Assembly: GCA_002269645.1 (NCBI GenBank)
Contig: NIVC01001283.1
Span: 248,001 to 312,000, forward strand
Direction: 5' to 3'
DNA length: 64,000 bases
From: Macrostomum lignano
Lineage: Eukaryota
In this document: in pieces, positions 11,581 to 60,535 of the stretch
Layout: each line of letters starts with the position of its first letter
Position numbering within the stretch: the first letter of the stretch is position 1
Position numbers and translations under genes: made by a program
Notes under the pieces: generated by a model
Databases searched by the model: none
Seen by the model: only the letters and a program-made list of their open reading frames with translations
Told to the model about the DNA's origin: nothing

Positions 11581-11771
11581 CAAGGAGTTCTATAATTAGC
11601 AATCTGGAGTGGAAACGAGTTTTACCTCATGAGGCCACGCAAATTGTTAAGATAAGGAGCTAGCACTGAATGTCTATGGCTCCGTCGGACTCTGTCTATG
11701 CTACTCTGGCCTCATGAGGTATAAGTGAAAAACTCTTTTCCACTCCAGGTTGCTAATTATAGAACTCCTTG
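11581..11771. mobile_element. P-type MITE (CAAGG ends, 7-bp TSD)
   Basis: TIR CAAGGAGTTCTATAATTAGCAA.CTGGAGTGGAAA; ATCTGGG at 11574-11580 and 11772-11778. Confidence 0.75.
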
Positions 11772-11782
11772 ATCTGGGTTTA

Positions 11783-12105
11783 GACCATGGAGGAAAGAAT
11801 AGAATGGAGTGCTAATGTGAGCCAGTTATTTTTATCTCGCTCGATCTTCACTTTTAACATCCCTTTCCCCCGTTCTTTCCTATTGGCTCGTGACTGCCAT
11901 AGACAAAGTATTTTTCGTGTCGCTTTCGTTTTCGTTCCCCTCTGAAAGGTATGTCCCAGCATAGTACGAGCTCGCATCAAAATATGCTTTCAGCCAATAG
12001 GAAGGAACGGGGGGAAAGGGATGTTACGACGTAAAAGCGAAAATCGAGCGAGATAAAAATAACTGGCTCAGATTACCACTCCATTCTATTTTTTCCTCCA
12101 TGGTT
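11783..12105. mobile_element. TA-flanked MITE with about 110-bp TIRs
   Basis: RACCATGGAGGAAA.AATAGAATGGAGTG..TGAGCCAGTTATTTTTATCTCGCTCG inverted at both ends; an interior fragment recurs inverted at about 25866-25975. Confidence 0.75.
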
Positions 12106-13149
12106 TAGACGTACATTTGACTATAATTGCGATTGCTATATATACATGTAGATTCTGTCAGTGTCTATGGTCGAAATCTATGTGAGAGCGCGGTTTGAAT
12201 CAAACTTGCATACGATGGCCACAGACTAATTGAGCTTTGCATGCGCTAAATGGTGGTTACATATCGATCGATAAAATTCAGTCTTAAACTGACAGCAACC
12301 CCGGCCAAGACTTTAGTGCACGCAATTTAAAAAAAAATACAGGATAAATTTTTCTGAGAGTTTTAAAAAGGGTAGGCCAATTCACAAGGAAAAATAATAT
12401 CTGCAGCTAGTCCTGAGGCTAGGCTATATCAGCATCACAGAAGCGAATAAGAAGCTTTCAATTTTTTCTATAGCTCTTCAGAGATTACACTACATGTACG
12501 CGTAGTAACAGTGTAGCAATTGGAATATCCTTAACTTTGCATAGAATTCACGCAAGGCTGCTTTCTGAGCGGTAAGTGTTTTTGAGCTTTTTTATGCATT
12601 TGAATTTTTTAAGACAGCGAAGTTGCTCGTAATTTCGATGTCCTCAATTTTAAAGTGACTTGTTGGTATTATGGGAAAATCAAGTATTTGCATGAGGAAA
12701 GTTCTCAACAATATACAAATTTGTACATTCAGACTGAACAGAAATATTTTGTGTAAACTTAACAACGGAGAAAATTTAATGTAAACATGCACAGGATTCA
12801 TAATAGGAGAATTAAGTGTGCATTATTGAATACACAGTAGAGATCTTAGGAGTTTTTATGAGCTTCGTAAGTTGTTGCACAAAGACAATAAGTGTCCACC
12901 ATTTTCTCGAGAATTTCTTCCGTCAGTTGAAGTGGCAAATCGGAGACTGTGGGCCATAGAAAAATTTATTCTGATACACGATTCAATGCGCATCGCTCAA
13001 TCCACAGGATTTTGAGGTAAACAGTTTTAGGAAAACGAATGACAGCAGGAAATGAGAACAAAGAACTGAGGGGTGTTTCTCGAAAGCTTGCTTAAGATCT
13101 ATGGTAAGACAGACTGCGTATGATTAATCGTAAGGGCGTATCAACATCC

Positions 13150-13620
13150 AGAAGGTCGACAGCGAGCATTCAATCGCGAGCTCAGGCTACTTTGTGGCGT
13201 GTTTGCTGATGCCACAGACGGAGATGGTGGCCTCGAGCTGGCTTCCTCTGCCATGCCAATCCTCAATCCAGAAGACAATGGGCGTCAGTCGTGGATTGTC
13301 TTCGCCAATTATTTGCAGCACCTTCAAGTCAGTAGCCGACATTTCGGCGGCGGTCCGTCACCGGTTTTCTCTACGTTTTTCTCCTTGATTCGCTGCAAGA
13401 TCTTCTTTCAACTTTTTTGTAACTTTTCAAAAGGGTAGCTAGTCTTGCACTGCTCATTGATCAGAGCTGTCACGATCTCCCAGGCCGTTTGCTCGTCGTT
13501 TCTGGCACGCAGGCGGTTGGCCTTTCGACAAAATGGCAGACGAATGTCCCTGCAGGGCATCGAGAAGAATGTCTTCGTAGTCTTTTGCTTACATGTGGTT
13601 GTGTAGTAGTGACATTTAGT
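13150..13620 (-). pseudogene. Degenerate Myb/SANT-like (Harbinger accessory) ORF
   Basis: Broken reading KDYEDILLDAL..AWEIVTALINEQCKTSY..KTGDGPPP, typical of the Myb_DNA-bind_5 family. Confidence 0.5.
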
Positions 13621-13949
13621 AGCGCAGAAGAAACAAGTGTAAGAAAAATCAATTTTGAGCTTGCCTTTTCATTGTGCTCCGTTTTTATGTTCTACTGACT
13701 TTGGCACATAGATTATAGGTAATTTCTTTAAAAATTGAACTTGAGTTTGGCGTTCGGTGCTTGCCTAGACCACAGATTCTATAAACACTAGATGGCTCCT
13801 CACTCAGCGAAAAATCTTGCTCCCAAACAGATCGTCTATGGTTGGAATCGCTATTTTTAGCCCTAGTGTTAAACGCAGGCTTTTAATGTGTTCTATACTC
13901 TTCTACTTTGTTCTATTCTTCTAGCTATGGAAAGTGAAAGCGAGGCATT

Positions 13950-15536
13950 GGGCCGTATGAATAAAACGTGAGAAAATCTTTAAAGATTATCTTTCGAGCC
14001 AAGAATTTCTTTAAAGAAATTCTTTTCCGGCAAGAAAATCTGTTGGAGAAAATCTTACGAGTCAAGATATTCTAGAAAAGACATGAATAAAAGTTTCTCG
14101 GCTCGTGAGATTTTCTCGGCGACTGCCACTTGGCTGAAAGTTGTCTAGGGCCCAAACCAAGATGTCGGTGACGTGGAATCGACGGCCGTCTCCTCAGGCT
14201 TGGGCGCAGCCCATGCTGTGTCTATGGCTAAAACCACGTGAAGACCGAAAATCCGTCCAGAAAAATCCTACTAGAAAGTGGCAAAATCCATGTGGAGTTT
14301 ACCTGAACATCAGGTGACAGGAAAGTCACTTTGCTTTGAAATTTTACCCTGAGATTGAGCGTCCTGGCATCGAATGGTTGCCAATTTTTTACATGTATAT
14401 CGTGATTACTCTTTGCAGGAGCCCAGAAACAATGCAAAAAAAACTGCGAGCATGTTATAAGACGCTGCGTGAGGGGTAGAAATGGGAGCTGCCGTGTGTA
14501 CAAAACTGTGTCCTTGGACCGTTCGCAAGCTGAGCGACGTAAATAGCCTACCAGTGAAGTATGCTACCAGATTTCATTGAAACCGCGCAATCTTCTCTCG
14601 AGAAACATGTCTGCCGCATCGGATGCCGAGTCTGAAAGTCAACAGGAAGCCGAGGAGGAAGCCGACTACATTGTCAACGTACTCTCTAAGCACCCGGTTC
14701 TTTTATCAAAGAGTAGCACGCCCGTCGTGAAGAAGAAGAAGGAGGCGGCCATTGCAGCATTGTGCGCTGAGTTAGAAATGCTGACAGGAAAGCTGTTCGA
14801 GACCGGCAAAACATCGAAGAAGATCGCCAACATGAAGACGCGTATGAAGGGCAAGGTGGATCGAAATAGGACAGGGAATCGTCCCATAAAACTTCTTCCA
14901 TGGGAATCCAGGTTGGCCCGCATAATGGACGCGGATTCGAATCCAACAATGTCGCAAACTCCAGGGGCAAGTGCGGCTGGATTCCAAGCAAGTGCAACCG
15001 TCGTCTCGCCACAGCCAGCTGATGAGAGACGTTCACCCTCCGTGCAGCCTAAGGAACCAGCGAGGAAGCGTCGCATGTCTGGCGAGACAGAGGAGACGGA
15101 GAAGTTGGGCAACGCCGATTTGCAACGACTGGTGCTGCTGGAGCAGCTGCGCTACGTCAGACTGAACGTCAGTCAGATATGTCTCCACTGGAGTGGCCTG
15201 TCGGGGCAGGTACTCCTTGGTCTTTCTGATCTGAAGGAACATCTCGTGTCTCGTGTTATGGGCGCTGAAGATTCGCTTGAGCCAGAGAAAGAGTTGCTCG
15301 CATAAAACTCAAGTGTCGGCTCTCTCGGCGAGAAAATCACGTCTTTTATTCATCAGAAAGCAAGAAAATCTTTTCCTCGTGAGATTTTCTTGCCGAGCAA
15401 ATCTTTTCTTGTGAAAGCTCGAGATTTTCTTGGCGAGAAAATCTTGCAAGAAACTCGCAGTTTTTTATTCTTATAAACGCAAGAAATTCTTGGATTTCTT
15501 GCAAGAAAAAAATTTCTTTTTTTATTCATACGGCTC
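13950..15536 (+). mobile_element. Non-autonomous PIF/Harbinger element
   Basis: TIR GRGCCGTATGAATAAAA, 3-bp TSD ATT (13947-49, 15537-39), many subterminal AGAAAATC repeats. Confidence 0.85.
14607..15305 (+). CDS. Harbinger Myb/SANT-like DNA-binding protein
   Basis: Open 232-codon ORF with KKIANMKTR..TGNRPIKLLPWE and C-terminal LQRLVLLEQL; no transposase in the element. Confidence 0.7.
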   Translation: MSAASDAESESQQEAEEEADYIVNVLSKHPVLLSKSSTPVVKKKKEAAIAALCAELEMLTGKLFETGKTSKKIANMKTRMKGKVDRNRTGNRPIKLLPWESRLARIMDADSNPTMSQTPGASAAGFQASATVVSPQPADERRSPSVQPKEPARKRRMSGETEETEKLGNADLQRLVLLEQLRYVRLNVSQICLHWSGLSGQVLLGLSDLKEHLVSRVMGAEDSLEPEKELLA

Positions 15537-16150: not shown

Positions 16151-16777
16151 TTGGTTTTTGCATGCTAAGTGAGACATTTTTCAAGCAATCTAAGACTGAA
16201 TAGCAAAAACACTATTGTCTATGGCCACCCCTCGCTGCAGCCCAGCTTTTTGGGATCGCCTTGCAAGCAAAGTGAGAAATTTTTTCAAGCTAAGTGAGAA
16301 CCATATTGAAAACAAAAGCTGGGCTATGGCAAATCAACCACCAGGCATGACACGAGATGATTGGCGATACATGCTGATGGATCGGCTTGGAAGAGAATCG
16401 CTGCATGTCATTACTCCGCACAAGATCGCAGGCTGGGAGCTCCACTGCACTCGAAAGTTTGCTCAGTGTATCAACATGCAACCCTTTATTTGAACGCTTA
16501 TAACATTATCAACAATTTTTGTACCGCTTGTTTTGTTGTGTTCCTGCGTATCCTTTTCTAAATATATAGTTTCCGACAGTACATCATTTTGTAATTTCGT
16601 AAAACCACCCGTTTGTTTTCAATATGGTTCTCACTTAGCATGAAAAAATTTCTCACTTTGCTTGCAAGGCGATCCCAAAAAGCTGGGCTGCAGCGAGGGG
16701 TGGCCATAGACAATAGTGTTTTTGCTATTCAGTCTCAGATTGCTTAAAAAATGTCTCACTTAGCATGCAAAAACCAA
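16151..16777 (+). mobile_element. Internally deleted derivative of the Tc1-like element at 53033-54574
   Basis: Same about 170-bp TIR starting TTGGTTTTTGCATGCTAAG, TA flanks; MANQ fused directly to PPGMTRDDW. Confidence 0.9.
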
Positions 16778-16779
16778 TA

Positions 16780-17378
16780 TCGCTTTTGACGCTCTAGATA
16801 AGACTTTAGACATTCAAAATAAGACTGCATAGGATCGCATGCAAGGCCAGGCTAGCCACGGCCAGAGCATGCCCAGTCTTGGCTGCAGGAATGGCTTGGC
16901 CATAGACTAAAAAATGGAATATCAAAATGAGAATAAGACGCTCAATATGAGACTGAGTGTGAAAGCCTTCAGATATCGCTCTAACCCTCTGACCTTCAGC
17001 CAGCTCTCCTTCTTCACCCCTTGGGTTGCATCTGACCCCTTGGATTTCACTGTGATGGCACCATCGATTCCTGCAGCAGACCAGTAAACAATGGATCAAC
17101 CATCCTAGCTGCCGCTCAAATTCTGCTTCTTGTTTATTGCCTAATTTCTCCTTAGCTGTTTGTATGGTGACTGCCAAAAAGCAAATAAATTACGTTCACT
17201 CCCGGTCTCATATTGAGCGTCTTATTCTCATTTTGATATTCCATTTTTTAGTCTATGGCCAAGCCATTCCTGCAGCCAAGACTGGGCATGCTCTGGCCGT
17301 GGCTAGCCTGGCCTTGCTTGCGATCCTATGCAGTCTTATTTTGAATGTCTAAAGTCTTATCTAGAGCGTCAAAAGCGA
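16780..17378. mobile_element. TA-flanked MITE with about 175-bp near-perfect TIRs
   Basis: TCGCTTTTGACGCTCTAGATAAGAC.. inverted at both ends; shares the TA at 16778-79 with the adjacent element. Confidence 0.85.
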
Positions 17379-17682: not shown

Positions 17683-18075
17683 TTACTCGAACACCTGGTC
17701 ACGGTGGATGTCGCACGCGGACATGTTGTCCGCCTCCTCATCACTCCGCAAGATGACAGACTCCAGATTCTCTGGCAGCAATCGAGGCATCACTAGCTGC
17801 AGATCGAGAGGAGCGTTCCACTTCAGCCGAGAGCCTGGTTCATGTCGCATGGCAGCTGGGCAAGAGCACGCCTCTTCCACAAAATGATCGCTGCACACTT
17901 TTAAGTCTCTGCATCGAATTTCCTCGAGCGGGAACGGCAGCTCCAGAATCTGCATCCATCGCGTAGCGGTTGCCGTATCTTGAGGAAATCGGTGCAGCTT
18001 GATAGGGGTGTTTTGAGGCGGAGAGGTAACTGCCTTATTTTTGCAGCCTGCAGCACAGCAGATTTTTGAGTTCAT
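17683..18075 (-). CDS. THAP zinc-finger domain ORF (TE-derived, truncated)
   Basis: CCAAGC..LHRFP..RW..VCSDHF: C2CH THAP signature. Confidence 0.8.
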   Translation of the reverse strand: MNSKICCAAGCKNKAVTSPPQNTPIKLHRFPQDTATATRWMQILELPFPLEEIRCRDLKVCSDHFVEEACSCPAAMRHEPGSRLKWNAPLDLQLVMPRLLPENLESVILRSDEEADNMSACDIHRDQVFE

Positions 18076-18469
18076 TACCAGAAGCTTGTTGGTCTTCGCC
18101 TTCGGTGTTCAGTGTCAAATATATAATTCTATCTAGTTGTTGCAGGAGAAAGAACTGGGTGTGCTAGAATCAGTGAGAGAAAAGTTTTTTTGCTGGCTCT
18201 ACGCTAGTTATAAGCTGCTGGCGCGGGGGGCGAAGTCTCGCGAGCGAGGGATTCCAACCATAGACAGTGAGAATTTGGCCTCCACTGAAGGAATGGAGAG
18301 TGAGCCATCTAGTGTTTATAGAATCTGTGGCCTAGACTAGAGTAGCCTAGATTCTTCTCCTTAGTTAGGACCATAGATAAAAAAACACTAGATGGATCCT
18401 CGCCTATTTCATGAATATGCTACTTTCAATTGGGCGTCTGTATAGAGTTTTTTGGATATATTTTTGCAT

Positions 18470-18900: not shown

Positions 18901-19670
18901 GAAGGGGTGAAGCTAGCGGTAGGGAATGCCGCTCTGGCTTCTTAGCTTAGCGCTGACGAACTGTATTTGATCATTAACCTCTGCCATAGACAATAGAAGC
19001 ATACTTAGTGTTGTAGTGTTGTAGTGTTATATTAAAACGCATAGTGCTATAACTACCCCCTCCCAAAAGGAAGATAACTAGATGTGCATCGGTTCGGTAC
19101 AGTAACATTATGAAAACGGCATCATGCACAAACAAGAACATGTTCGTAGTGTCCGTAGGGACACACGTACGAGCAACATAAATATATAAACTAATTGAAC
19201 GTACATATAGCTATTGCAAACCCCAGACGCAAAAGTACAAGCATAGACAGCTCCAGAACAATGACTACGCTGTGCATTTCATCACTAATCTTTATCCATG
19301 TTCTTGGCTGCGGGCCGTCACCTTGCTACTCTGGGGCTATTTCATAGCTAGCGTCGCTATCTTCATCTTCCAAGCTCATATTGTTGCTGATTTGTAGGTT
19401 AGAGAGCGATGGTAATCCTTTAGCAGACATGAGAGGACTTCCAAAGATGAATTCTTTGCTCACCAGTCACTTTTTATGCCATAGACTGGGGGCAGCAGTT
19501 GTCTCGAGTGTAGCGCTCTGCCACTGTGAGTTAAGCCAACTGCTGCTAAGCTCAAACTGACTGCAAAAAGCTATAATACATCCTTTTTGTAAGCAGATGC
19601 CATATTGCTTAAGTAAATTAAATAGGAGCTACTTTTGGCTTCGAAAACTGAGAAGTAAAATAACTTTAAT

Positions 19671-19900: not shown

Positions 19901-20207
19901 CTGGTCCCGAGGAGTCGATTGAGTTTTTGAAACTAAAAACTCGAGTGTACCTCAGCAAGATCGGTACACAATCCATCCGTTTCTGGCCAGCACAGGAACA
20001 AGATGATAGAACACTACAGGAATTCAATTTAGACTCTCTTTCATATTCAACCGAGTCCTTTCGATTCAGTCAGGCAAAATTGTCTATGGATTTTCTCTCT
20101 TTATTTTTCCACTTGCAGAACCATTAGAGGAAATTCTAAACAGACACAAGACAATCAAAATAAACACTTTCAAACTGAAACGGTAAACATTAGGACAGTC
20201 TCAGCAC

Positions 20208-21306: not shown

Positions 21307-22149
21307 TGTGTTTGATTTGATAAGACGTCTGTCTCTTTCGGTTTTCTTCTTTTCACCTGAGTCGGTTATAAACTTGCATGTTTAGCCATAGACAATTTTG
21401 GCTGACTGAATCGAAAGGGTTCTCTTGAATATGAAAGGGAGAGTCTTAATTGAATTTCTGCAAGTACTGTATTTCATAGACAGTGTCTGAATTGCTGTTT
21501 CGATTGTTTGAATTAAAAGTGTGCTTGGTCAAAATAAGCGGTAAAACGGTGTATACAGCTGCTTTGCGCTTCAATGGTCTTGGTCTGTGCGCCTAGCCCA
21601 GCAGCTATACATAAATCCTACAATGTTACCAGGTTATCCCAAAATTAAGTTTCGGTCACAAAAACTGTTATGATTGACGCTCAAGGCTCCAAGGTCTGTT
21701 CAATTATTGATTTGTGCTCAGAGGCACGATTTTTTGCGCGTTTATTGGGTGCGCCTCACAGCGTCTTAATTGTTGTTTCTTTTTGGGCACTGGGCTCTTT
21801 CTATGAGTATTTAATCTGCTTCACAGCAAGTACAGGCGGGGCTCGCATCTATCATTGTCTATGTTGCATACAAAAAATAAATATATACAAAGTACGAACA
21901 AAATGAGTCTGCTTGGGCCGAGCCCACAGCACCTCCCTTTCTTTATGAAAGTCCATAATGTTCACATGCACAGCACTGTTCACTCCTTGTACAACACTTT
22001 AGGCTCCAGCAGCAATCTCTCGCTCCGCCGAAGTTGCACCGCCTCTGAAGTGCCCCCCAGAACTTTGATGTTCTCCGGGTTCATTGGGTGGAGACTCAGA
22101 GACCTCGTCCCGCAGGCCTCTCTGGGTCCGGGTCCTGCTCGTTAGTTCC

Positions 22150-37640: not shown

Positions 37641-37642
37641 GT

Positions 37643-50445: not shown

Positions 50446-50890
50446 CTCCAGCAGATCTTAGTGGCACCCGCGCTCGCCACTCTCTCAGACGATCGACGTC
50501 CTTGAAAGGCAGACGAAAGAAGGATACAGATGCATCAGAAACGCAGTTATTGCAATTAGCTACCGCGCACTTTAGTGGCTTGGCTGTTGTTGTTCAGACG
50601 TAAGGGCTATATGACATGGCTGTTACGGAGTTGTGTATCGACGACGGCAACTGAGTCTGGTGACTGAGCGATGTTGTCTTGCTTATTTGATACATGCATT
50701 TTCTAAGTGTGAAATGTCTTATATTTCTGAGCATCGGCTTTGTACACCATTCTAGCCACAACTTGTGCCATAGACTAAAAAGTGTTATGCTTTTCGTATT
50801 GTGCTTTTGGAGACCGTGATGCGCAAAGACCGCTCTTGAATTGTTAAGTTCTTTTGGAGCTCTTGGGCTCTCAGCTTTTCTCAAATTTTA

Positions 50891-53021
50891 TTGTCCCATG
50901 ACTGAGCGTGCGTTTTTGGTCCAAAAAGCGTGCATTAATCTTACAGCCCAACCCTATGCGGCGTAGCCAAAAAAGCGTGCAGATAATGAAAAAAGCGTGC
51001 AGATAATGAAAAAAGCGTGCAGATAATGAAAAAGCGTGCAGATAATAGCGTACAGCGCCACAAAAAACAGCAGTTTGCAAGTGTGAGTTTTGGTGTTCGT
51101 TGTGTTGGCTGTTTTGGGGGTTGGCCTGCGCTGGGAGGTTGGGCACGCTTTTATTCACCTGAACCTATATTGATCGGAATGTACGCGCGTACATAGTGAA
51201 TGACAAATATATATATATATCGACTAACTTGGCCTTTGAGCCCTCGTACTGATTTTCTCGCAATTCTGGTCTTACACAAGCAACGTTTATTAAAACAAAG
51301 GGGAAAAACACAGCAAAATTTAACACCGATGCACAGAAACAAAAAGTCAGCAGTAAAACAGATGACAGCAGAAAGGTCGACGAAGATCTTAGATGCGTCC
51401 AAACGTGCAGCCGGTGACGTGACCACTGAAATTAAATACAACCTGTGGTACAGGCCCAATAGTATTGGTGGTTGGGGGCTCCGCGATCACACGAGCAGCA
51501 GGATCGTCCGTATTCGCCACGGCCCGTCGCGGGACCTTGCACAGAAGCGCCAAAACCTCCTTATCGACGCAGGCCACCTGGTTCGCGTGCATCACCGTGT
51601 TCAACGACGAGCACATGTCCTGCATCTCGCCAACGCGGCGTGACCCGAATCAAAGGTACCGCTCGACAGAGGCCGTGGCCTTGTGCCCCGTGACCTTGCA
51701 AATGTCGGATACTGAATGGCCGGCCACGGAGAGCTCCTTGATGACGGTGGACCGAACGCAGTGCGCAGTGTAGCGCCGGCTCAAGCTGGCTGCCTCGCAA
51801 ATGCGTGGGAAGAGCTCGGCAAAGCCATTAACGCCAATAGGCTGCTTGGGCGAAAACCACGTCCCCTTCTCGAAACCACTAACCTTCGGCTTCAGGAAGA
51901 ACGCCACGTCATCGGACGCCTTTTCGCCACAAGATGAAGAGCTAGGAATTGACGCACTTCTCTTCAGGAGGTAAAGTCGGAGGCACTCGACCGGGCACTT
52001 CACAGGAGACTCGGTCATCACAGCCTCCTTGACATTGTCGCTAGCGGCACGGCCCAAGTCCCTGGCGACATTCTTCACCCGCTTCTCTCGAAGGCGAACG
52101 ATCTCGCGACCGTCGGGGGCCTTGTCGAACTCGAAGCTGTCCACCCGCAAATCCCTCAACCACTCTCGACCACGGGTGCCGAAGTAGAAGACGACGTTGT
52201 AGTACGTCTCATGCAGAAGGCGAGTGGGAGTGCTCCGGTCGAAGTAGTCACCCAGTTTCTGTAGGTCCGATGGCTCCATAGCCTGGAAGTGGTCCACGCG
52301 GCCACCGCGGGCAAAGAAAAGACGCCCACCGGCCTTCAGCATTTGATTTGCAGAGTAGAATCGACCATCGGAAATGATGTTGATGCCCCGGTTCTTCATC
52401 AGGTAGCGGAACAAGGCAGCGCGAATGCACACGAGGCTGCTAGGAGCATACGGCTGGCCATCAGTCTTGCGAAGAGTGCCGTAAAAGTAGCGCAGGCCAA
52501 CGCTCAGCTCCTCAGGTTGCGAGGTGTCCAAATCGACGCGCAGGTGCGGATACTTGGCCAAGAAATCGCGAAATTTCGCGACGTATTGAGCCTCATGCTT
52601 CTTAGACGATTTACATCGGTCTCTTGCTCCAGCGCCCGGATTGATGCGTCAAGGTCGATCGAGGCCAAGTCGTCGTTCAAATCAAGGATGGAGTCGAATA
52701 GGCGGTTCAGCTCCTCGTTGTCGTCCACACTAGTTGCTTGGAGACGTAACTGCTCGTCCACAAGCTTCTCAACGTCGGCCCACTCAAAATGGTGGGAGAT
52801 CTCACCGGCCGTCATGCCGCTTCTCATGCCGTTAGGAAATAATGAATCCATATGGGGCCAAACTCACGATCAGAAGCTTGTGCATAGCAAGAAATTGTCT
52901 ATGGTCACTAAGAAAATGTCTATGGTAGGAACTCCTAGCTGCAGGAACAAAAAGCGTGCAGATAATAAAGTACAGTGCTGTGACAAAGAATTTTTTCAAC
53001 GCACGCTCAGTCATGGGACAA
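50891..53021 (-). mobile_element. Crypton (DUF3504 tyrosine recombinase) element with TIRs, near complete
   Basis: TIR TTGTCCCATGACTGAGCGTGCGTT with TA flanks; recombinase motifs RGRE, HCVR, TGH, ERY; frameshift at about 52612 and in-frame TGA at 51650-52; restored ORF 52851-51389. Confidence 0.85.
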
Positions 53022-53032
53022 TATGCCTACTA

Positions 53033-54574
53033 TTGGTTTTTGCATGCTAAGTGAGACATTTTTCAAGCAATCTGAGACTGAATAGCAAAAACACTATTGT
53101 CTATGGCCACCCCTCGCTGCAGCCCAGCTTTTTGGGCGCGCCTTGCAAGTAAAGTGAGACATTTTTTTCAAGCTAAGTGAGAACCATATTGAAAAAAGGG
53201 GTGGTTTTACGAAATTACAAAATGATGTACTGTCGGAAACTATATATTTAGAAAAGGATACGCAGGAACACAACAAAACAAGCGGTACAAAAATTGTTGA
53301 TAATGTTATAAGCGTTCAAATAAAGGGTTGCATGTTGATACACTGAGCAAACTTTCGAGTGCAGTGGAGCTCCCAGCCTGCGATCTTGTGCGGAGTAATG
53401 ACATGCAGCGATTCTCTTCCAAGCCGATCCATCAGCATGTATCGCCAATCATCTCGTGTCATGCCTGGTGGGCAACCGTTTTCCTCAGCCACGATTGCGG
53501 GCTCTACAAGGCGACGCTTAATCTCACTCTTAAGAACGTTGTGCGCCATGCCATCTCCACGGGATTCAAAAACGGCGAGTACGCCGGTAAGATTTGCAGA
53601 CGAATGAGATCCTCAAACTGCTCAGGTATCTCAATCCCTTGGTGAAAATTTGGACCATCGAAAATGAGAATAACTCGTCTGCCAGGAGCATCGGCCTGTA
53701 TGATGTTAGCCAGTTCCAAAATAAACTGCTGAAATCTCTCTCGTGTTTGACCACCTCGCTGCAGCGTACAGTGGACAAGACCCAGTTCAGATGACACTGC
53801 TAAGCACATCGTCATGTTGGGACCCCTCTGCGTTACCACCGTTCGTCGCACAGGCTGGCCAACTCTTGCTCGACCCTGCGTCCTTCTCGTCCATAGGTTG
53901 TAGCCAGTCTCATCGATAAACACAGCCAGGTCATTCACAGGCAGTCCCGTCATCATCATAGCATAGTCGCGCCTCGCTTGTATCACATCCTGTGTATTCG
54001 CAGCAAGCCTCACGTCGGCATCCTTGGTGGCGACTTTCAGTGAGATAAGCATGGAGCTCATCGCTCTAGCAATGGTGGATTCAGAGATAGCCGGCTTTTG
54101 TGGCAACTCCAAAGTTAGTTTTCTCTGCACATCCGTCAGAGTAACATAGGGATTTTGCTCAACTATCTGCTCAACGGCGTTCCGCATTTCAGCATCCATT
54201 TTTGTTGACCCCGGCTTGCGGCCACCGCGTTGCAACGCATGGAATTCACCAGTAGCTGCGTAGCGACTCCATATCCGATAGGCCGTCTTCTTGTTCAGAT
54301 TAAGGATTTTGGACGCAGTCGAAATTGAGTAACCATCTTCGACGGCATTGACCAGGCGCTCTCTATCCTCGTTGCTTGTTAGACGCAGTTGATTTGCCAT
54401 AGCCCAGCCTTTGTTTTCAACATGGTTCTCACTTAGCTTTAAAAATTTCTCACTTTGCTTGCAAGGCGATCCCAAAAAGCTGGGCTGCAGCGAGGGGTGG
54501 CCATAGACAATAGTGTTTTTGCTATTCAGTCTCAGATTGCTTGAAAAATGTCTCACTTAGCATGCAAAAACCAA
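53033..54574 (-). mobile_element. IS630/Tc1-like transposon A (DD33E)
   Basis: TA TSD, about 170-bp TIRs, ORF 54400-53316 with FIDETG, IFDGPNFH, YSPFLNPVE; 5-bp duplication frameshift at 53545-53554. Confidence 0.92.
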
Positions 54575-54641
54575 TACTAGGCTTACTCGTGCGATAATAG
54601 TCTATGGCACTCGTGCGCTTCGCGCACTCGAGCCAAGACTA

Positions 54642-56229
54642 TTGGTTTTTGCGAGCTATCTCAGCCAAGGAGCAAGCAAACTCATCCATCCCATAGATTT
54701 CAATACGACGAAGGAGGTGGTTTGAACCATAGACTATCACGTTTTTTCAACCAAACTCATCCAACGGGCGAGCAATTTCAGCCATAGCTTGTTTATTAAG
54801 CGAAAAATTTAATTGGTTCGTATATAAGAGACTTTATGATAGAGCAGCACATCAGAACACAGGAAATTGACTAACGGAACAAACAAATGACTCACTAAAT
54901 AAGCACTGGTTGCATCTGATGCACGGTGTCAATTTGTCAGCTAGTCTCATTAGACAAAGGGCTGCTGCTGGATGCACTGAGCATAATTTCTGCCGCAATG
55001 AATTTCCCAGCGAGCCACCTTCAGTGGTGTCACCGTGTCCAAGGCAATGCGGCCAAGTCGCTCCAACAGAATACAGCGCCACTCGGTACGGTTCATTCCA
55101 TCCGGAATTCCACCAGCTTCCTCTTCCACCAGGGCAGGATTGACCAGCTGCCGTCTGATGTCAGCCTTCACCGCGCTATGCGCCATTTCGCATGGGTTTA
55201 GGAACGGCGAATAGGCAGGAAGCAGCTGCAGTGAAATCCTCGGCTGATGATTCTGTGGCACGATGACTCCACGGTGGAAGGTCGGCCCGTCACAGACAAT
55301 TACAATTCTCGCATTGTTAACCTGGCCTTGGACTTGCTCCACTAGCTCGTTTACAAACTGTTGAAACCGCGGCCGCGTTTGGCCTCCTCGGAAGATCTCA
55401 CTCTTGACCAAACCCAGCGCAGAGGAGACGGCAAGGCAAATGGTCAAATTTGGTCCTCTCTGAGTGGTGCAGATGCGACGCACAGGCTGACCTCTGATTG
55501 CTCGGCCTTGTGACCTTCGGCTCCACAAGTTATATCCAGTCTCATCGATGTACACCACCACGGCATCGTGTGGCAGCGTCGTCATCATCTGGGCATAGTC
55601 GCGTCGTCGGGCAAGCACTTCATCCGAGTTGGCTTGCAGGCGAATGTCCGCGTCCTTAGTCGCAATTTTGAATGTGTACAGAGAGCCCTGCAGTGCTCTG
55701 TGCACAGTCGTGGTCGACACCACGGGTTTGTTTGGCAGTCTTTCGTGCAGCTGCTGACACATGGTCTCGAGTGTTGCAAACGGATTGGCATCCACAATGC
55801 GAGTCAACTCTTGGCGCATTTCTGCGTCAATCTTGCTTGATTCCTCCCGTATTCCGCCACGTTGGAGAGCAGCAATTCTTCCAGTAGCTACGTAAGTCCG
55901 AATTATATGTCTGGACGTCTTCAGCTTTATCCCGAGAATGCGTGAAGCAGTGCTCAAATTTTGTCCGTCATTCCGGCCATGCGTTGATTAGCTTCTCTCT
56001 GTCGGAGTTGGATGTTTGTCGCAACTGAGCCATCGGAGGAGGAGGAAAGAAAGAAGGGAAGAGGAAATGAATGGGCAGACAAGCTATGGCTGAGATTGCT
56101 CGCCCGTTGGATGAGTTTGGTTGAAAAAACGTGATAGTCTATGGTTCAAACCACCTCCTTCGTCGTATTGAAATCTATGGGATGGATGAGTTTGCTTGCT
56201 CCTTGGCTGAGATAGCTCGCAAAAACCAA
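54642..56229 (-). mobile_element. IS630/Tc1-like transposon B (DD33E)
   Basis: TA TSD, about 150-bp TIRs also starting TTGGTTTTTGC; ORF 56033-54950 with a +1 frameshift near 55976; YIDETG, VCDGPTFH, YSPFLNPCE. Confidence 0.92.
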
Positions 56230-57308
56230 TATTATCGCACTCGAAAGCCTAGTAGTAATCTAAATATACTAAATCTCTAATATTTGTTTGTTTGTATGCT
56301 TGTCCATAATCTTACATTAACTATGTTTAAGAGAGTCGAGCTCTACTGGCTCAAGCAGCCGTTAGCTGCCTACACAGCCATAGACAAAAATGAACTGAAT
56401 TACGCTCGAAAATACAAGTGAAGCTCGCAATAAGTTTGCTGTGCTCAACCCACAGCAAAAAGCTTGGTGACCGGAGGGGGTTGGTGGATTCTAAAAATCG
56501 GACTCAGATTTTCATCCTTATTGGCACTCTATACTTGGCGACCTCAATACTCTTTGGACAAGAGCCAGAGTGAATGGCGCTGTGTCGTTTCTGTTGGGAG
56601 AGCGAAACCCCTATATATCGTTCCAGAGCCGCGCTGCTGTGCCCAGTGACACGTGCAATATCTGCACGCTGTACTCCCGCCTCATTAAGTGTAGTCGCAC
56701 ACGTCTTGTGCAGGCTAGCGGCCTGTCGGCTCCTAGGACGCCCGTAGCCCATAGCTTGTCTTCGACACTTGACGGGATCGGCTCAGCCCACCGGAGTCCA
56801 GAGCCCTTGCCGTCGCGCGTGCTAAAATTCATAGAGGCATCCAAAGCGCGTCTAGAGTCAGCAAACTCCTGGTCCCTTCACAGGCTCCACGTCTGCTTGC
56901 ACTGATTCACGATATAATACTGAATCATGCTGAAGAAATCCTTTAGCGACGAGGCAGAATAGCGTTCACCATTCTTATTACGCACTTTCAACATGAAGAA
57001 TCGCAGGACATAGTTTAGATCACTCTTGCTCATGTCTTTAAGATCTTTCAGAACCATCAAGTTCATCACACTCCCATTTGCCTAATGCTGCTTCTTCAGT
57101 GCATGCCAGGCACTGAAGGTGTTGACCATCTGTAGAAAAGTCAATGCCGCGATATTGTGCTAGGCAGGCATGAAAAATAACTCAAGGCCCGCTTGCACTT
57201 AGCAGGGCCGACTTATATATTTGGCTATGACTAATTGCGTAATAAATCAATTATTGAAGTGGTTGGCTGTACGTACTTGTACGGGGCAGTGATAGCGCCG
57301 GACCAAGT

Positions 57309-57372: not shown

Positions 57373-57374
<2 letters not shown>

Positions 57375-57731
57375 CAGATGTACACTGCCCCACACCATCC
57401 ATTCGCATTTCTTCTTCGTCGTTACTGGAGTCACTGCGTCAATTGCATCAAAGACGTCCTGCTCATTCATAGACGCCGCATTCGGTTCAGCAGATTGAAT
57501 TTGTCAACAGTTAAATTTGTTTCAGTGAGGCTTTCCTGCTATTTATCTGTCGTCTGTCTGTCTTTATAAAATATGTATACAGTATTGATGTCTATGGCCA
57601 ATTTGCGGGTTGTAGTTAAATACAACCCGGAGATTTCTTACTAGCTGTTATATAAATTAGCGGGTTGCATTTCGTACAAACAAACAAGCAAGATTTTCAT
57701 TTCTAGTATATGGATTTAAGTGAGATGACAC

Positions 57732-57816: not shown

Positions 57817-58625
57817 ATTTGTTATCTTATACATATCCTGCTTGACCTCAAAACCATAACTTTTGGCTCTCTGAAGATCAGCCATCATGTTCTTGATCTT
57901 CGATGGTGATAAAGCGTAGGACATCCTTCCTTCAGAATCCTTGACTACAACCAATTCCTTAGGTCGTTGCAGTTACGGAAATCTCTCTCAAAATGTTACT
58001 TTAAAAAGTTTCAATGCATTGAATTTTTACTTATAGTAGTGTTTTATGCTAAAATTTGCCGATTTTAAATAAAATATACTATAAAGATATTACGGTACAA
58101 AATAAGCCCTGATACAGCTAAATGTATTTCAGTCAGTAAAACCCCACATTAGGGCTAAAATAGCAATTTAAAATATGTAAAAAGTTCGACAAATACGAGC
58201 TTTTACGAGAGTTGTTCTAAAAATAGCCGAGTTTAGTAGTGCAGTCGGCAGCAGTAGCTGGGTTAACACCCAAACTATCGCCCCTGTCCGTACCAGACGT
58301 CTACGAATTCTCGACTACCAGTAAATTGCACTCTGAAACAGTTTGGCGAAAACAAATGCAGTAAAACAATAAACACTTTTTTTGCCTGAAATGTGTGAGA
58401 ATTCAGACAATAAAGTTTTTTATCGCATATATACATATTTGAGCACTGCTCAGCTAATAGGTAAACAACACGAAACAATTCAAGCAGAGGGGACGCTGTA
58501 AATTTCGATCGAGGCCTGTTTCCGCAACAACACTATGTAGGCTCCCCTAAGCATCAGCGAGACGGGAGTTTTTACCTTCTTAACACTAAATTTACAAAAT
58601 CAAACCTCAATGCATTCCGATCGAA

Positions 58626-58915
58626 GGGGTTGTAGCCTAGTGGTCAGAGCGTCGGTCTCACAACTGAAAGGTCTGGGTTCGATTCTCGACCCACTTAGGA
58701 CAATTTGTGTCCTTGAGCAAGACACTTAACTCTGCATTGCTTCAGTTCACCCAGCTGGAAAATGGGTGCCAGCATTAGCTGGGGTAATTGAGGGTGTGTG
58801 GCGACCCCCCCTTCCCCCAGTCCTTGGACTGAACAGCCGTACGCAGCCTTCAGATGCGCCGCGCAATAGCTGCGGCTGAGCTGTCGGTTGCATATCTGCA
58901 CATTGGGGCACATGT
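58626..58915 (+). mobile_element. tRNA-derived CORE-type SINE
   Basis: A box TAGCCTAGTGG, B box GGTTCGATTC, then CORE-like TGTGTCCTTGAGCAAGACACTTAAC..CAGCTGGAAAATGGG. Confidence 0.75.
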
Positions 58916-58987
58916 AATGAAAAATATTCTGAATATCAAAGAATGAAGAGTAAAGGGTCAGACGGAGATTGAGATATTTGAGGAATC

Positions 58988-59371
58988 ACACAGAGCTCAC
59001 AGTTCACAGAGCTCACAGTTCACAGAGCTCACAGTTCACAGAGCTCACAGTTCACAGAGCTCACAGTTCACAGATCTCACAGTTCACAGAGCTCACAGTT
59101 CACAGATCTCACAGTTCACAGATCTCACAGTTCACAGAGCTCACAGTTCACAGATCTCACAGTTCACAGATCTCACAGTTCACAGAGCTCACAGTTCACA
59201 GATCTCACAGTTCACAGAGCTCACAGTTCACAGATCTCACAGTTCACAGAGCTCACAGAGCTCACAGTTCACAGAGCTCACAGTTCACAGAGCTCACAGA
59301 GCTCACAGTTCACAGATCTCACAGTTCACAGAGCTCACAGTTCACAGATCTCACAGTTCACAGAGCTCACA
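58988..59371. repeat. 16-bp minisatellite CACAGA(G/T)CTCACAGTT
   Basis: About 24 tandem units. Confidence 0.95.
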
Positions 59372-60028
59372 GTATCGTGTCCATATAAACGCACAGTAGA
59401 ACTCTCAACTCAGGGAGTGAAAGTGAACTGGGCTTCGCGGCTCAAAAACAATGCTTAAAACTTGGTCAAAACTCTCCAATACTGTCAGCTGCTACTGCAG
59501 TGGGCGGAGCTGGCCGAAAATGTGTCCCCTTATCCCCTAATGGTAAATAATTCAATGGGAGCTTGCTTCATTGATTTGCTCACCCTCTGTCTCTCACTCT
59601 ATTCCTCTCTGAAGTGGCGATTTATTGTCGCTATTGGCGCTTAGTTGGCGCCGTAGAACTGCCTGCCTGACGAGTTCTGTGCAGACACGTTCGTAGGCGT
59701 CCTTGCCTATTTGCTATATACAGATATAGTTGGTAGCATAGAGTTTTATGTGTTGCTAAGCTAGACCGCCGATTACGTAATAATATTAGTGAATTGCACA
59801 ATGCAGCTCAAGTATATGGTCCGGTCTAATTGTCTGTGTGTTTTTTTCTTTTTACCAATTCATTTCTGCAAGTCTGAATTGAGTCGCTTTCTGTAAACTT
59901 GGACAATTTTAATTATCTCAGCAATGCATTTGGCATGCTTAAGTAGCGATATATTTCTTGGCATGTGGCTAATATTATTTGATAATATTACTCATAAACT
60001 TTTTCCGAATTCGTCCGAATAAGCAGAC

Positions 60029-60535
60029 CAAAGAGTATTGAGGTCGCCTATAGTATAGAGTGCCAATAAGGATGAAAATCTGAGGCCGATTTTTAGAATC
60101 CACCCACCCCTCCGGTCACCAAGCTTTTTAGTCTATGGCACAAGTTGTGGCTAGAATGGTGTACAAAGCCGATGCTCAGAAATATAAGACATTTCACACT
60201 TAGAAAATGCATGTATCAAATAAGCAAGACAACATCGCTCAGTCACCAGACTCAGTTGCCGTCGTCGATACACAACTCCGTAACAGCCATGCCATATAGC
60301 CCTTACGTCTGAACAACAACAGCCATGCCACTAAAGTCCAGCTACATTAGCTACTTGTATTTTTCTCATGCACTCTATGCATATTTCTGAGCATCGGCTT
60401 GTACACCATTCTAGCCACAACTTGTGCCATAGACTAAAAAGCTTGGTGACCGGAGGGGGTGGGTGGATTCTAAAAATCGGCTTCAGATTTTCATCCTTTT
60501 TGGCACTCTATACTAGGCGACCTCAATACTCTTTG
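60029..60535. mobile_element. Intact P-type MITE
   Basis: About 155-bp TIRs starting CAAAGAG; 8-bp TSD AAGCAGAC (60021-28, 60536-43). Confidence 0.9.

What the first reader, a model, noticed from the sequence alone, without database searches (positions are those of the whole stretch)
11672..60434. One octamer (CCATAGAC) sits just inside the ends of nearly every unrelated transposon superfamily
Seen: about 50 exact CCATAGAC/GTCTATGG copies in 49 kb (random expectation about 1-2) and none in 1-11.6 kb. None were found in the Polinton-like element or in the long transposase/pol ORFs. Removing TIR/LTR duplicates still leaves about 40 different contexts. Where ends are definable the motif lies about 45-135 bp inside: Tc1-A (about 66), Tc1-B (85), piggyBac (67), THAP element (66), P-MITEs (91, 102), TA-MITEs (114, 120), Crypton (about 96, 117). 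It is often 80-180 bp upstream of the element's ATG, in either orientation. These elements use unrelated enzymes (DDE families, tyrosine recombinase, RT/integrase), so a shared transposase site is unlikely. Inference: a host factor site convergently acquired by TEs (germline promoter element, or an architectural site analogous to IHF sites at bacterial IS ends), or a licensing mark for silencing or for insertion into this locus. I do not recognise it as a described motif.
Basis: partly seen in the sequence, partly recalled or inferred. Interest (0 to 1): 0.9.

Follow-up and report, generated by a model that had tools for sequence, protein, structure and literature searches.

The report
Shared promoter-like octamer in flatworm transposons
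In the flatworm Macrostomum lignano, unrelated mobile-element families all carry the exact sequence CCATAGAC in the non-coding DNA just ahead of their genes, which points to one undescribed host DNA-binding factor that these elements depend on.

Summary
CCATAGAC occurs 50 times in 11672-60434 (1.5 expected) and is the commonest 8-mer of the window. It sits in 41 unrelated contexts and never in the 6.9 kb of recognisable transposon ORFs.

The window is Macrostomum lignano: a host exon is 100% identical to an M. lignano protein.

The site is longer than the octamer. It has R before, W then A after, and a T-rich patch 4-6 bp upstream. That profile fits a protein-binding site, not a shared ancestral repeat.

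Outside evidence:
- Eight contigs from other public datasets encode diverged piggyBac and Tc1 relatives (about 40-65% identical). All carry the exact octamer in non-coding flank, seven of them 73-224 bp upstream of the ATG.
- It is the only 8-mer they all share.
- 81 outgroup piggyBac loci (232 kb) have none.
- Three host gene promoters checked lack it.

Best reading: a promoter-proximal site for an unidentified host factor, kept or acquired by piggyBac, Tc1, THAP/P-like, Crypton and LTR elements. Transcription is the only step all of these share.

Rivals not excluded: an architectural site at element ends, or a piRNA-related signal.

I found no description of the motif in the searchable literature. 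Function is inferred, not shown.

The parts
11672..11679 (-). octamer copy at the centre of a 190-bp palindromic MITE-like hairpin (11581-11771), 91/92 bp from its ends
11897..11904 (+). octamer copy in a 333-bp MITE (11778-12110), 119 bp from the left end; related decayed copies at 25920 and 10778
12163..12170 (-). octamer copy, unassigned repeat; TATA-like run about 26 bp downstream
13834..13841 (-). octamer copy in a THAP/P-like family fragment; conserved island compared with 18258
14220..14227 (-). octamer copy, unassigned repeat
16217..16224 (-). octamer copy in the left TIR of the Tc1-A-derived MITE (16149-16779), 68 bp from the end
16704..16711 (+). octamer copy in the right TIR of the Tc1-A-derived MITE, 68 bp from the end
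16900..16907 (+). octamer copy in the left TIR of the 600-bp MITE (16778-17380), 122 bp from the end
17251..17258 (-). octamer copy in the right TIR of the 600-bp MITE, 122 bp from the end
17686..18108 (-). THAP-domain ORF (P-like element); the octamer at 18258 lies about 150-200 bp upstream, antisense
18258..18265 (+). octamer copy upstream of the THAP ORF (antisense to it)
18984..18991 (+). octamer copy, unassigned repeat
19479..19486 (+). octamer copy, unassigned repeat
20082..20089 (-). octamer copy in the left TIR of the 1.4-kb TIR element (20017-21460), 65 bp from the end
21386..21393 (+). octamer copy in the right TIR of the 1.4-kb TIR element, 67 bp from the end
22260..22267 (+). octamer copy, unassigned repeat
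22886..22893 (-). octamer copy followed 5 bp later by the Crypton-family 12-mer repeat
22940..22947 (-). octamer copy followed 5 bp later by the Crypton-family 12-mer repeat
23755..23762 (-). octamer copy followed 5 bp later by the Crypton-family 12-mer repeat
25716..25723 (-). octamer copy, unassigned repeat; TATA-like run about 25 bp downstream
26477..26484 (+). octamer copy, unassigned repeat
27635..27642 (+). octamer copy, unassigned repeat
27796..30953 (-). LTR retroelement with 171-bp LTRs (27796-27966, 30783-30953), a gag-like DUF7041 ORF and a partial RT ORF; coding capacity incomplete, breaks not counted
27930..27937 (-). octamer copy in the 3' LTR, sense, 29 bp from the LTR 5' edge
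30917..30924 (-). octamer copy in the 5' LTR (U3-like part), sense, 29 bp from the LTR 5' edge
31935..31942 (-). octamer copy, unassigned repeat
32188..32195 (+). octamer copy, unassigned repeat
33043..33050 (+). octamer copy forming a 13-bp perfect palindrome with its own 3' flank
33834..33841 (-). octamer copy, one of a pair 31 bp apart, just outside the piggyBac
33865..33872 (-). octamer copy, the other of the pair 31 bp apart
34108..36686 (-). piggyBac element (approximate ends from short inverted repeats); intact 602/603-aa DDE_Tnp_1_7 ORF at 34488-36299
34141..34148 (-). octamer copy in the 3' subterminal region of the piggyBac, 33 bp from the end; the matching position at the other end has two mismatches
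34279..34286 (-). octamer copy about 200 bp downstream of the piggyBac stop codon, sense
36398..36405 (+). octamer copy about 100 bp upstream of the piggyBac ATG, antisense
36487..36494 (-). octamer copy about 190 bp upstream of the piggyBac ATG, sense
38894..38901 (+). octamer copy, unassigned repeat
39547..39554 (-). octamer copy, unassigned repeat; TATA-like run about 35 bp downstream
40789..40796 (-). octamer copy, unassigned repeat
41870..41877 (-). octamer copy, unassigned repeat
43992..43999 (-). octamer copy, unassigned repeat
44621..44628 (-). octamer copy in one half (44521-44720) of a MITE split by a 5.8-kb insertion
50768..50775 (+). octamer copy in the other half (50569-50782) of the split MITE
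50969..52965 (-). Crypton-like element (approximate extent, bounded by its family-specific 12-mer repeats); tyrosine-recombinase/DUF3504 ORF at 51650-52561
52897..52904 (-). octamer copy upstream of the Crypton ORF, sense
52918..52925 (-). octamer copy upstream of the Crypton ORF, sense, 21 bp from the previous one
53022..54585 (-). Tc1-A element with about 184-bp TIRs; DDE_3/HTH transposase ORF at 53504-54556
53099..53106 (-). octamer copy in the Tc1-A 3'-side TIR, 77 bp from the BLAST-defined end
54501..54508 (+). octamer copy in the Tc1-A 5'-side TIR, about 85 bp upstream of the first ATG, antisense
54600..54607 (-). octamer copy in the 54-bp stretch between Tc1-A and Tc1-B, belonging to the sequence they inserted into
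54640..56231 (-). Tc1-B element with 153-bp TIRs; DDE_3/HTH transposase ORF at 54950-55957
54727..54734 (+). octamer copy in the Tc1-B 3'-side TIR, 87 bp from the end
56137..56144 (-). octamer copy in the Tc1-B 5'-side TIR, sense, about 110-190 bp upstream of the transposase frame
56378..56385 (+). octamer copy, unassigned repeat
57590..57597 (-). octamer copy, unassigned repeat; TATA-like box about 29 bp downstream
60131..60138 (-). octamer copy in the left TIR of the complete MITE (60029-60535), 102 bp from the end
60427..60434 (+). octamer copy in the right TIR of the complete MITE, 101 bp from the end

Best explanation
CCATAGAC is the invariant core of a DNA site of about 16 bp (purine before it, A/T then A after it, a T-rich patch 4-6 bp upstream). 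An as yet unidentified sequence-specific DNA-binding protein of Macrostomum most likely recognises it. Transposons of both classes (piggyBac, Tc1/IS630, THAP/P-like, Crypton, an LTR element and their MITE derivatives) carry it in the non-coding region ahead of their coding sequence. When that region is part of a TIR or LTR, it appears at both ends.

The proposed mechanism is that the bound host factor activates or positions RNA polymerase II initiation some tens of bp downstream. This gives the element expression in the cells where new insertions are inherited, the germline and the neoblasts that feed it. Families keep the site under purifying selection, or acquire it anew, because transcription is the one step all these elements share.

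Shown: enrichment, independent contexts, extended logo, ORF avoidance, position upstream of ORFs, recurrence in diverged relatives from other datasets, and absence from outgroup piggyBacs and from three host promoters.

Inferred: that a protein binds it, that the protein is host-encoded, that the effect is transcriptional, and the cell type.
For: (1) 50 copies against 1.46 expected, and the commonest 8-mer in the window.

(2) 41 contexts with no flank similarity. There is significant base preference at -6, -5, -4, -1, +1 and +2 relative to the octamer edges. 14 of 56 one-mismatch variants share this flank signature, against 2.8 expected. This is the profile of a binding site with a rigid core.

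(3) No copies in 6.9 kb of transposon ORFs, against 7.1 expected.

(4) Upstream of coding sequence in the window: piggyBac at -190 and -100, Tc1-A at about -85, Tc1-B at about -110 to -190, two copies ahead of the Crypton ORF, one ahead of the THAP ORF, and one in the U3-like 5' part of a 171-bp LTR.

(5) Eight of eight external contigs encoding diverged piggyBac or Tc1 relatives carry the exact octamer in non-coding flank. Eight of the 10 copies lie 73-224 bp upstream of the ATG, seven of them sense. That is 10 copies in 5.5 kb of non-coding flank; 7 in the 4.5 kb of the six piggyBac contigs against 0.14 expected. It is the only 8-mer present in all eight. Their flanks share no BLAST-detectable similarity. 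R at -1 and W at +1 hold in every external site.

(6) Footprints: the octamer is a conserved island between diverged relatives.

(7) It is specific to the host lineage, not to the transposon superfamily. There are 0 copies in 81 outgroup piggyBac loci totalling 232 kb, against 5.8 expected.

(8) Over all upstream copies counted by hand, the orientation tally is 13 sense to 4 antisense.

(9) A TATA-like hexamer lies 18-46 bp downstream in 4 of 41 contexts, against 2% background (p = 0.009).

(10) Precedent in the same species: heat-shock elements in LTRs of M. lignano retrotransposons drive their transcription (PMC12801592).
Against: - No expression, TSS, accessibility or binding data were available, so transcriptional function is inference.
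- There is no fixed-distance downstream core-promoter feature. The A+T profile is flat beyond +14, and the TATA association covers only 10% of sites.
- MITEs, which need no promoter, carry the motif 65-122 bp from both ends. This is explained by descent from autonomous parents, but it fits an end-architecture role equally well.
- The window piggyBac also has two copies beyond its stop codon.
- Only three host promoters were checked, so the apparent restriction to transposons rests on a tiny sample.
- The species of the eight external contigs is unknown.
- Extreme core rigidity (few one-mismatch variants) is unusual for ordinary transcription-factor sites.
Confidence: 0.5

Rival explanations
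1. Architectural or tethering site at transposon ends. A host DNA-bending or chromatin-tethering protein binds inside the terminal regions and assists synaptic-complex assembly or target choice, as IHF or HMGB-type proteins do for some DNA transposons.
For: In seven TIR-bearing units (five repeat families) the octamer lies 65-122 bp inside both ends, within long TIRs. This includes five MITEs with no coding capacity. The window piggyBac has copies in both subterminal regions in non-homologous contexts. One external piggyBac (L004) has its exact copy at the 3' side.
Against: Five of six external piggyBac contigs have the exact octamer only on the 5' side, although they hold 290-650 bp of 3' flank. 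The motif also occurs in an LTR retroelement and ahead of a tyrosine-recombinase ORF, whose integration chemistry differs. Symmetry in TIR elements follows trivially from the TIRs themselves. Orientation relative to the end is not constant: outward in Tc1-A and the 1.4-kb element, inward in Tc1-B and the 600-bp MITE.
Confidence: 0.15
2. Small-RNA or silencing signal. The motif marks sites where piRNA precursors are initiated, or is recognised by a repressor, so that motif-rich transposon nests such as 11.6-60.4 kb act as piRNA source loci. This would be functionally analogous to the upstream motif of nematode piRNA genes.
For: The 49-kb stretch is a dense nest of young transposons with about one motif per kb. 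All seven Pfam-supported transposon ORFs lie on the same (minus) strand, as in unidirectional piRNA clusters. M. lignano has 436 such clusters, both uni- and bidirectional (PMC4604429). An 8-nt rigid core with loose flanks resembles the style of the nematode motif (PMC6436959).
Against: The motif belongs to the elements themselves and occurs in relatives on other contigs and in other datasets, so it is not a property of this locus. Elements would be selected to lose a silencing tag, yet the octamer is the best-conserved non-coding feature. No conserved position at a fixed downstream distance was found. The nematode core given in PMC6436959 is absent from the site.
Confidence: 0.12
3. Boundary or anti-silencing element. 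A host insulator-type protein bound at the site shields the element from heterochromatin spreading, without itself driving initiation.
For: It fits the same positional data as the promoter model and copes better with the copies beyond the piggyBac stop codon and at both ends. Homotypic pairs 21-54 bp apart occur (22886/22940, 33834/33865, 52897/52918).
Against: Most elements carry one or two copies, not arrays. The sense bias and 5' preference are not predicted by this model. No data on chromatin were available.
Confidence: 0.08
4. RNA-level element. The octamer acts in the 5' leader of the transposon transcript, for example as a seed-length match to a small RNA or as an export or translation signal.
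For: Length and rigidity resemble a seed match. There is a sense bias upstream of ORFs (13 to 4). The motif lies between the element end and the ATG, so it could be transcribed.
Against: Four of 17 upstream copies are antisense. The T-rich patch and purine 5' of the core, and the copies in both orientations within TIRs, are easier to read as duplex DNA recognition.
Confidence: 0.05
5. No function: fragments of one old dispersed repeat, chance, or an assembly artefact.
For: Nine of the 50 copies are duplicates from TIR/LTR/MITE pairs. Three piggyBac families share a homologous block next to the octamer.
Against: 41 contexts show no flank information beyond about 16 bp. 0 of 100 shuffles reach even 5 copies. 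The same octamer occurs in independent public datasets: the NCBI assembly, four Logan runs and a JGI sample.
Confidence: 0.02

Closest known systems
Heat-shock elements in LTRs of M. lignano LTR retrotransposons (PMC12801592)
   Same: Same species. A host transcription-factor site sits in the transposon's own regulatory region, upstream of the transcription start, and is used for the element's expression.
   Different: That motif belongs to a known factor, occurs in only six of 137 LTR family consensuses and confers stress induction. Here the factor is unknown, the core is not a heat-shock element, and the site is shared by Class I and Class II elements of at least five superfamilies.
Upstream (Ruby) motif of nematode piRNA genes, bound by the USTC/SNAPc machinery (PMC6436959, PMC6317315)
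   Same: A lineage-specific short rigid core with loose flanks, present at very high density in particular genomic regions and linked to transposon biology.
   Different: The nematode core quoted in PMC6436959 is a different sequence. It lies upstream of thousands of tiny stand-alone piRNA units at a fixed distance from the start, not inside transposons. No fixed downstream feature was found here.
Transposon-borne transcription-factor sites in general, such as lineage-specific factor sites spread by LTRs and SINEs in mammals or tissue-specific factor sites in insect endogenous retroviruses (my own knowledge, not checked with tools)
   Same: Elements depend on, and disperse, binding sites of host factors active where transposition is heritable.
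   Different: Those cases usually involve one family or related families. Here the same exact octamer recurs across unrelated superfamilies and is the only shared non-coding word.
Host architectural-protein sites at transposon ends, such as IHF at bacterial IS/Tn ends or HMGB-type assistance in Tc1-like elements (my own knowledge, not checked with tools)
   Same: The site lies inside the terminal 65-122 bp of TIR elements, at both ends.
   Different: It is also present in an LTR and ahead of a tyrosine-recombinase gene, is mostly 5'-only in the external piggyBacs, and has variable orientation relative to the end.

Membership tests
Single dispersed repeat family (all copies descend from one element) | Flanks of the copies align with each other beyond the shared word | tested here: not met
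   41 contexts show no information beyond -6..+10. External contigs share no non-coding BLAST similarity.
Transposase-binding subterminal repeats | Sequence is specific to elements with related transposases | tested here: not met
   The motif is present in piggyBac, Tc1/IS630, THAP, tyrosine-recombinase (Crypton) and RT/gag elements. By contrast, the 12-mer found is confined to Crypton-like contexts.
Transposase-binding subterminal repeats | Conserved in the same superfamily in other hosts | tested here: not met
   0 copies in 81 outgroup piggyBac loci totalling 232 kb.
Host transcription-factor site in transposon promoters | Lies in non-coding DNA upstream of the element's coding sequence or in the U3 part of an LTR | tested here: met
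   -73 to -224 in 7 of 8 external contigs. Window piggyBac, Tc1-A, Tc1-B, Crypton, THAP and the 5' LTR also fit.
Host transcription-factor site in transposon promoters | Degenerate flanks around a conserved core; weaker variants share the flank signature | tested here: met
   Chi-square significant at six flank positions. 14 of 56 one-mismatch variants lie above the random 95th percentile.
Host transcription-factor site in transposon promoters | Matches the recognition sequence of an identified factor, and transcripts start downstream of it | not testable with these tools
   No motif library and no TSS or accessibility data were on hand. The octamer was not found together with Macrostomum in any held paper.
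Host transcription-factor site in transposon promoters | Also used by host genes | tested here: inconclusive
   Absent upstream of three host genes: the MANEA-like gene in the window, and the Ank and GRHL genes in L001/L002. The sample is far too small.
Nematode-type piRNA upstream motif | Core sequence as given in PMC6436959 | tested here: not met
   That pentamer is not part of the 16-bp site.
Nematode-type piRNA upstream motif | Fixed distance to an initiator or small-RNA 5' end | tested here: inconclusive
   No conserved column or A+T peak beyond +14. Small-RNA data were not available.
snRNA-type proximal sequence element (SNAPc site) | Present about 55 bp upstream of snRNA or SL RNA genes of the same species | not testable with these tools
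   No snRNA or SL RNA gene in the window or loci (Rfam; SL sequence from PMC8629364 searched).
Architectural host-factor site at transposon ends | Present at both ends at a characteristic distance | tested here: inconclusive
   Met for the long-TIR elements and MITEs, at 65-122 bp. Not met for 5 of 6 external piggyBacs, which are 5'-only.

The most novel reading that the evidence does not exclude
One lineage-specific host DNA-binding factor serves as a near-universal entry ticket for transposons in Macrostomum. Elements of both classes can persist only if they carry its 16-bp site in their 5' region. The site would then be a pan-transposon promoter module, possibly borrowed from a specialised germline or neoblast programme or from small-RNA gene transcription. 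The same site might also seed precursor transcription in unidirectional piRNA clusters such as this 49-kb nest.
Probability: 0.25. Interest if true: 0.85.

Novelty: new variant of a known kind. Interest (0 to 1): 0.7.

Why it matters
Transposons are known to borrow host transcription-factor sites, but usually family by family. Here a single exact word is shared by unrelated superfamilies of one animal, is kept while everything around it diverges, and is absent from the same superfamily in other hosts. That would identify a common dependency of the whole mobile-element community on one host factor.

M. lignano already has a genome, 5'-end RNA data, small-RNA libraries and a single-nucleus accessibility atlas. 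The idea can therefore be checked quickly with existing descriptive data. It could reveal a germline or stem-cell regulator, a practical marker for recently active elements, and a handle on how piRNA source loci are transcribed in flatworms.

Tried and rejected
- **Literature.** Full-text searches for the octamer in either orientation returned primer lists only. There was no paper in which it co-occurs with Macrostomum, flatworm or transposon terms. The M. lignano genome/transgenesis paper, the piRNA paper, the LTR heat-shock paper and the flatworm multiome preprint describe no such motif.
- **Promoter sequences in Supplementary Data 1 of PMC5730564.** These are stored truncated, so they were useless as host-promoter controls.
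- **Spliced leader.** The 35-nt SL given in PMC8629364 does not contain the motif, and no SL gene is in the sequences held.
- **Structured RNAs.** No Rfam family reaches threshold in the window or in L001-L010. No tRNA was found in the window.
- **More M. lignano DNA.** The NCBI annotation excludes repeat-overlapping transcripts. The window's own transposases are therefore not on record, and only two genomic loci could be fetched.
- **Metagenome scan for piggyBac relatives.** It returned only distant outgroups, which I used as negative controls.
- **Fixed TATA or initiator spacing.** Only a weak TATA association was found, and the A+T profile is flat.
- **Resemblances to known factor sites recalled from memory.** None fitted across the whole core. 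They were not pursued and no letters are given.
- **The 'Polinton-like element'.** It was not found.

Full report
**1.

- CCATAGAC and its complement occur 50 times between 11672 and 60434, and nowhere else in the 64-kb window. Dinucleotide-preserving shuffles give a mean of 1.46 and never more than 4.
- It is the most frequent 8-mer in the whole window, ahead of words from a 52-copy satellite. Each one-mismatch variant has only 0-8 copies.
- Most of the 8 CCATAGAT copies come from a 22-bp satellite at 62269-62436.
- Self-BLAST shows that nine of the 50 are trivial duplicates in TIR, LTR or MITE pairs. This leaves 41 contexts.

**2. Where the window comes from**

- An exon-like ORF at 3096-3839 (minus strand) is a Glyco_hydro_99 domain.
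- It is 100% identical to a UniRef endo-alpha-mannosidase-like protein of Macrostomum lignano.
- That protein maps to 1575-3791 in three blocks.
- The best relatives of the window's piggyBac transposase are also M. lignano proteins.
- The window is therefore M. lignano. Its left end holds a host gene and further unannotated sequence (3.8-11.6 kb, with two no-Pfam ORFs), and I found no Polinton there.

**3. The elements are real and unrelated**

Pfam confirms the following:

| Element | Position (strand) |
|---|---|
| Intact piggyBac transposase | 34488-36299 (-) |
| Tc1/IS630 transposase A | 53504-54556 (-) |
| Tc1/IS630 transposase B | 54950-55957 (-) |
| Crypton-type tyrosine recombinase with DUF3504 | 51650-52561 (-) |
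| THAP-domain ORF | 17686-18108 (-) |
| gag-like DUF7041 ORF | 30192-30860 (-) |
| Partial RT | 29249-29911 (-) |

- The gag-like and RT ORFs lie between 171-bp LTRs (27796-27966 and 30783-30953).
- BLAST-defined TIR pairs delimit Tc1-A, Tc1-B, a 1.4-kb TIR element and several MITEs.

**4. Anatomy of the site**

- Aligning the 41 contexts on the octamer shows no information beyond about 16 bp.
- Within that span there are significant preferences: T at -6 to -4, purine at -1 (39 of 41), A or T immediately after (38 of 41, never C), then A.
- One-mismatch variants carry the same flank signature five times more often than random positions do (14 of 56 against 2.8 expected).
- This is the profile of a protein-binding site with an unusually rigid core. 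It is not the remnant of one repeat.

**5. Position within the window**

- No copy lies in 6.9 kb of Pfam-supported transposon ORFs, against 7.1 expected (P = 8e-4).
- In TIR-bearing units the octamer is 65-122 bp inside both ends. In the LTRs it is 29 bp from the 5' edge.
- The piggyBac is the exception, with copies 33, 171, 192 and 281 bp inside my approximate ends.
- Relative to coding sequence:
  - about 190 (sense) and 100 (antisense) bp upstream of the piggyBac ATG;
  - about 85 bp upstream of the Tc1-A ATG (antisense);
  - 110-190 bp upstream of the Tc1-B frame (sense);
  - two sense copies ahead of the Crypton ORF;
  - one antisense copy ahead of the THAP ORF;
  - one sense copy in the U3-like part of the 5' LTR.

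**6. Evidence from outside the window**

*M. lignano genomic loci.* The two loci I could fetch (43 kb, mostly genic) hold 6 copies against about 1.3 expected (43 kb on both strands, my arithmetic). One is 400 bp upstream of a piggyBac ORF.

*External transposon contigs.* More telling are eight short contigs from four Logan runs and one JGI sample.
- Each encodes a different piggyBac or Tc1 relative. The six piggyBac proteins (plus four further relatives not fetched as contigs) are 39-64% identical to each other and 41-46% identical to the window's piggyBac; the two Tc1 proteins are 45-46% identical to the window's Tc1-A.
- All eight carry the exact octamer in non-coding flank.
- There are 10 copies in 5.5 kb. 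Eight of them lie 73-224 bp upstream of the ATG, seven in sense orientation. None is in an ORF.
- It is the only 8-mer present in the non-coding parts of all eight. The runners-up are overlapping derivatives, or occur in at most four contigs.
- BLAST similarity among these contigs is confined to the ORFs.
- Purine before and A/T after the octamer hold in every external site.

*Retention as well as convergence.*
- Three piggyBac families share a homologous block of about 20 bp immediately 5' of the octamer.
- Two THAP-family fragments in the window keep the octamer as an island in diverged sequence.
- So part of the pattern is long-term retention, not only convergence.

*Controls.*
- 81 outgroup piggyBac loci from other metagenomes (232 kb, 23-38% identity) contain no copy, against about 5.8 expected from composition.
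- The motif therefore follows the host lineage, not the transposon superfamily.
- Three host promoters lack it: the MANEA-like gene in the window, and the Ank and GRHL genes in L001/L002. Three is too few to conclude that host genes never use it.

**7. Mechanism**

The only step common to cut-and-paste DDE elements, a tyrosine-recombinase element and an LTR retroelement is transcription of the element's own gene.

Four features fit a promoter-proximal binding site of a host factor:
- the 5' position;
- the sense bias (13 to 4 over all upstream copies I could assign);
- the U3-like position in the LTR;
- the 5'-only pattern in five of six external piggyBacs.

The expected activity is in germline or neoblasts, where insertions are inherited. 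That last point is inference. A TATA-like hexamer 18-46 bp downstream occurs in 4 of 41 contexts against 2% background (p = 0.009). There is no general fixed-distance feature. M. lignano LTR retrotransposons are already known to use heat-shock elements in their LTRs (PMC12801592), so the principle has a precedent in this species.

**8. Rivals**

- *Architectural role at element ends.* This is not excluded for the long-TIR elements and their MITEs (65-122 bp from both ends). It explains the LTR, the Crypton and the 5'-only piggyBacs poorly.
- *piRNA-related role.*
  - It is suggested by the density of the nest and by all seven recognisable transposon ORFs lying on one strand, as in the unidirectional clusters reported for this species (PMC4604429).
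  - Against it: the motif belongs to the elements wherever they are.
  - A silencing tag should also be lost, not conserved.
  - The site differs from the nematode piRNA upstream motif as quoted in PMC6436959.
- *RNA-level reading.* This is weakened by the antisense copies and by the duplex-like flank preferences.
- *Common descent, chance and artefact.* These are excluded.

**9. Novelty and limits**

- I found no description of this motif. Subscription literature is not covered.
- The kind of thing, a host-factor site in transposon regulatory DNA, is known. The breadth across superfamilies and the rigidity of the core are unusual.
- Limits:
  - no expression, TSS, accessibility, small-RNA or binding data;
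  - only 107 kb of M. lignano sequence;
  - external contigs of unknown species;
  - very few host promoters.
- The identity of the factor and the transcriptional effect remain inferred.

Noticed in passing
window 17686-55957 (ORFs at 17686-18108, 29249-29911, 30192-30860, 34488-36299, 42969-43451, 51650-52561, 53504-54556, 54950-55957): Every Pfam-supported transposon ORF in the nest lies on the minus strand, and the octamer itself is 31 minus to 19 plus. A one-sided orientation is what a unidirectional piRNA cluster, or a long intron of a plus-strand gene, would produce.
   Followed up: partly
window 44820-49913: A 5.1-kb element with 450-bp, 99%-identical TIRs is inserted into a MITE (halves at 44521-44720 and 50569-50782). 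It contains no octamer. Its six longest ORFs scanned gave no Pfam match, and it has a strong positive AT skew.
   Followed up: partly
window 1575-3791 (-), repeat at 2100-2467: Host endo-alpha-mannosidase-like gene, 100% identical in exon 1 to a UniRef M. lignano protein. A GC-rich 12/23/35-bp tandem repeat lies within the gene span, and the middle block matches at only 77%.
   Followed up: partly
window 50969-51046, 52954-52965, 22867-22934, 23738-23749: A 12-mer (TTATCTGCACGC) occurs 8 times exactly, against 0.4 expected. Four copies form a 20-bp tandem array after the Crypton ORF and one lies before it. Three more lie exactly 5 bp after octamer copies at 22.9-23.8 kb. It is probably the family-specific recombinase-binding repeat of Crypton-like elements.
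   Followed up: partly
window 62868-64000; also 61829-62250, 62269-62436, 58989-59373: Several short-unit satellites: a 22-bp unit in 52 copies running off the window end, with strong negative GC skew; two other 22-bp arrays; and a 16-bp array. The 62269-62436 unit contains a one-mismatch version of the octamer.
   Followed up: no
window 7073-7187 and 8856-9019; L001:20442-20611; L002:14623-14790: A repeat of about 110-170 bp flanking an unannotated 312-aa ORF (7310-8248, minus strand, no Pfam hit) is 75-84% similar to sequences in both M. lignano loci. In L002 the match lies just upstream of the GRHL gene start. Its nature is unknown.
   Followed up: no
L002:1-150: A tandem repeat of about 69 bp in the M. 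lignano assembly carries two octamer copies per unit, one with the typical flanks. The motif therefore also occurs in satellite-like DNA.
   Followed up: no
window 33043-33055: One octamer copy forms a perfect 13-bp palindrome with its own 3' flank. In many copies, especially the piggyBac ones, the octamer is followed by TAT, which gives a partial dyad. This hints that the factor may bind as a dimer at some sites.
   Followed up: no
window 15671-15763 and 31747-31810: Sub-threshold Rfam microRNA-precursor hits (E = 0.002 and 0.03, far below the gathering scores). The second is the 62-bp inverted repeat seen in self-BLAST. Most likely these are MITE-type hairpins, not microRNA genes.
   Followed up: no
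L007:60-230: The 5' flank of one external piggyBac contig holds a tandem array of a unit of about 22 bp upstream of the octamer. It may be the subterminal repeats of that family.
   Followed up: no
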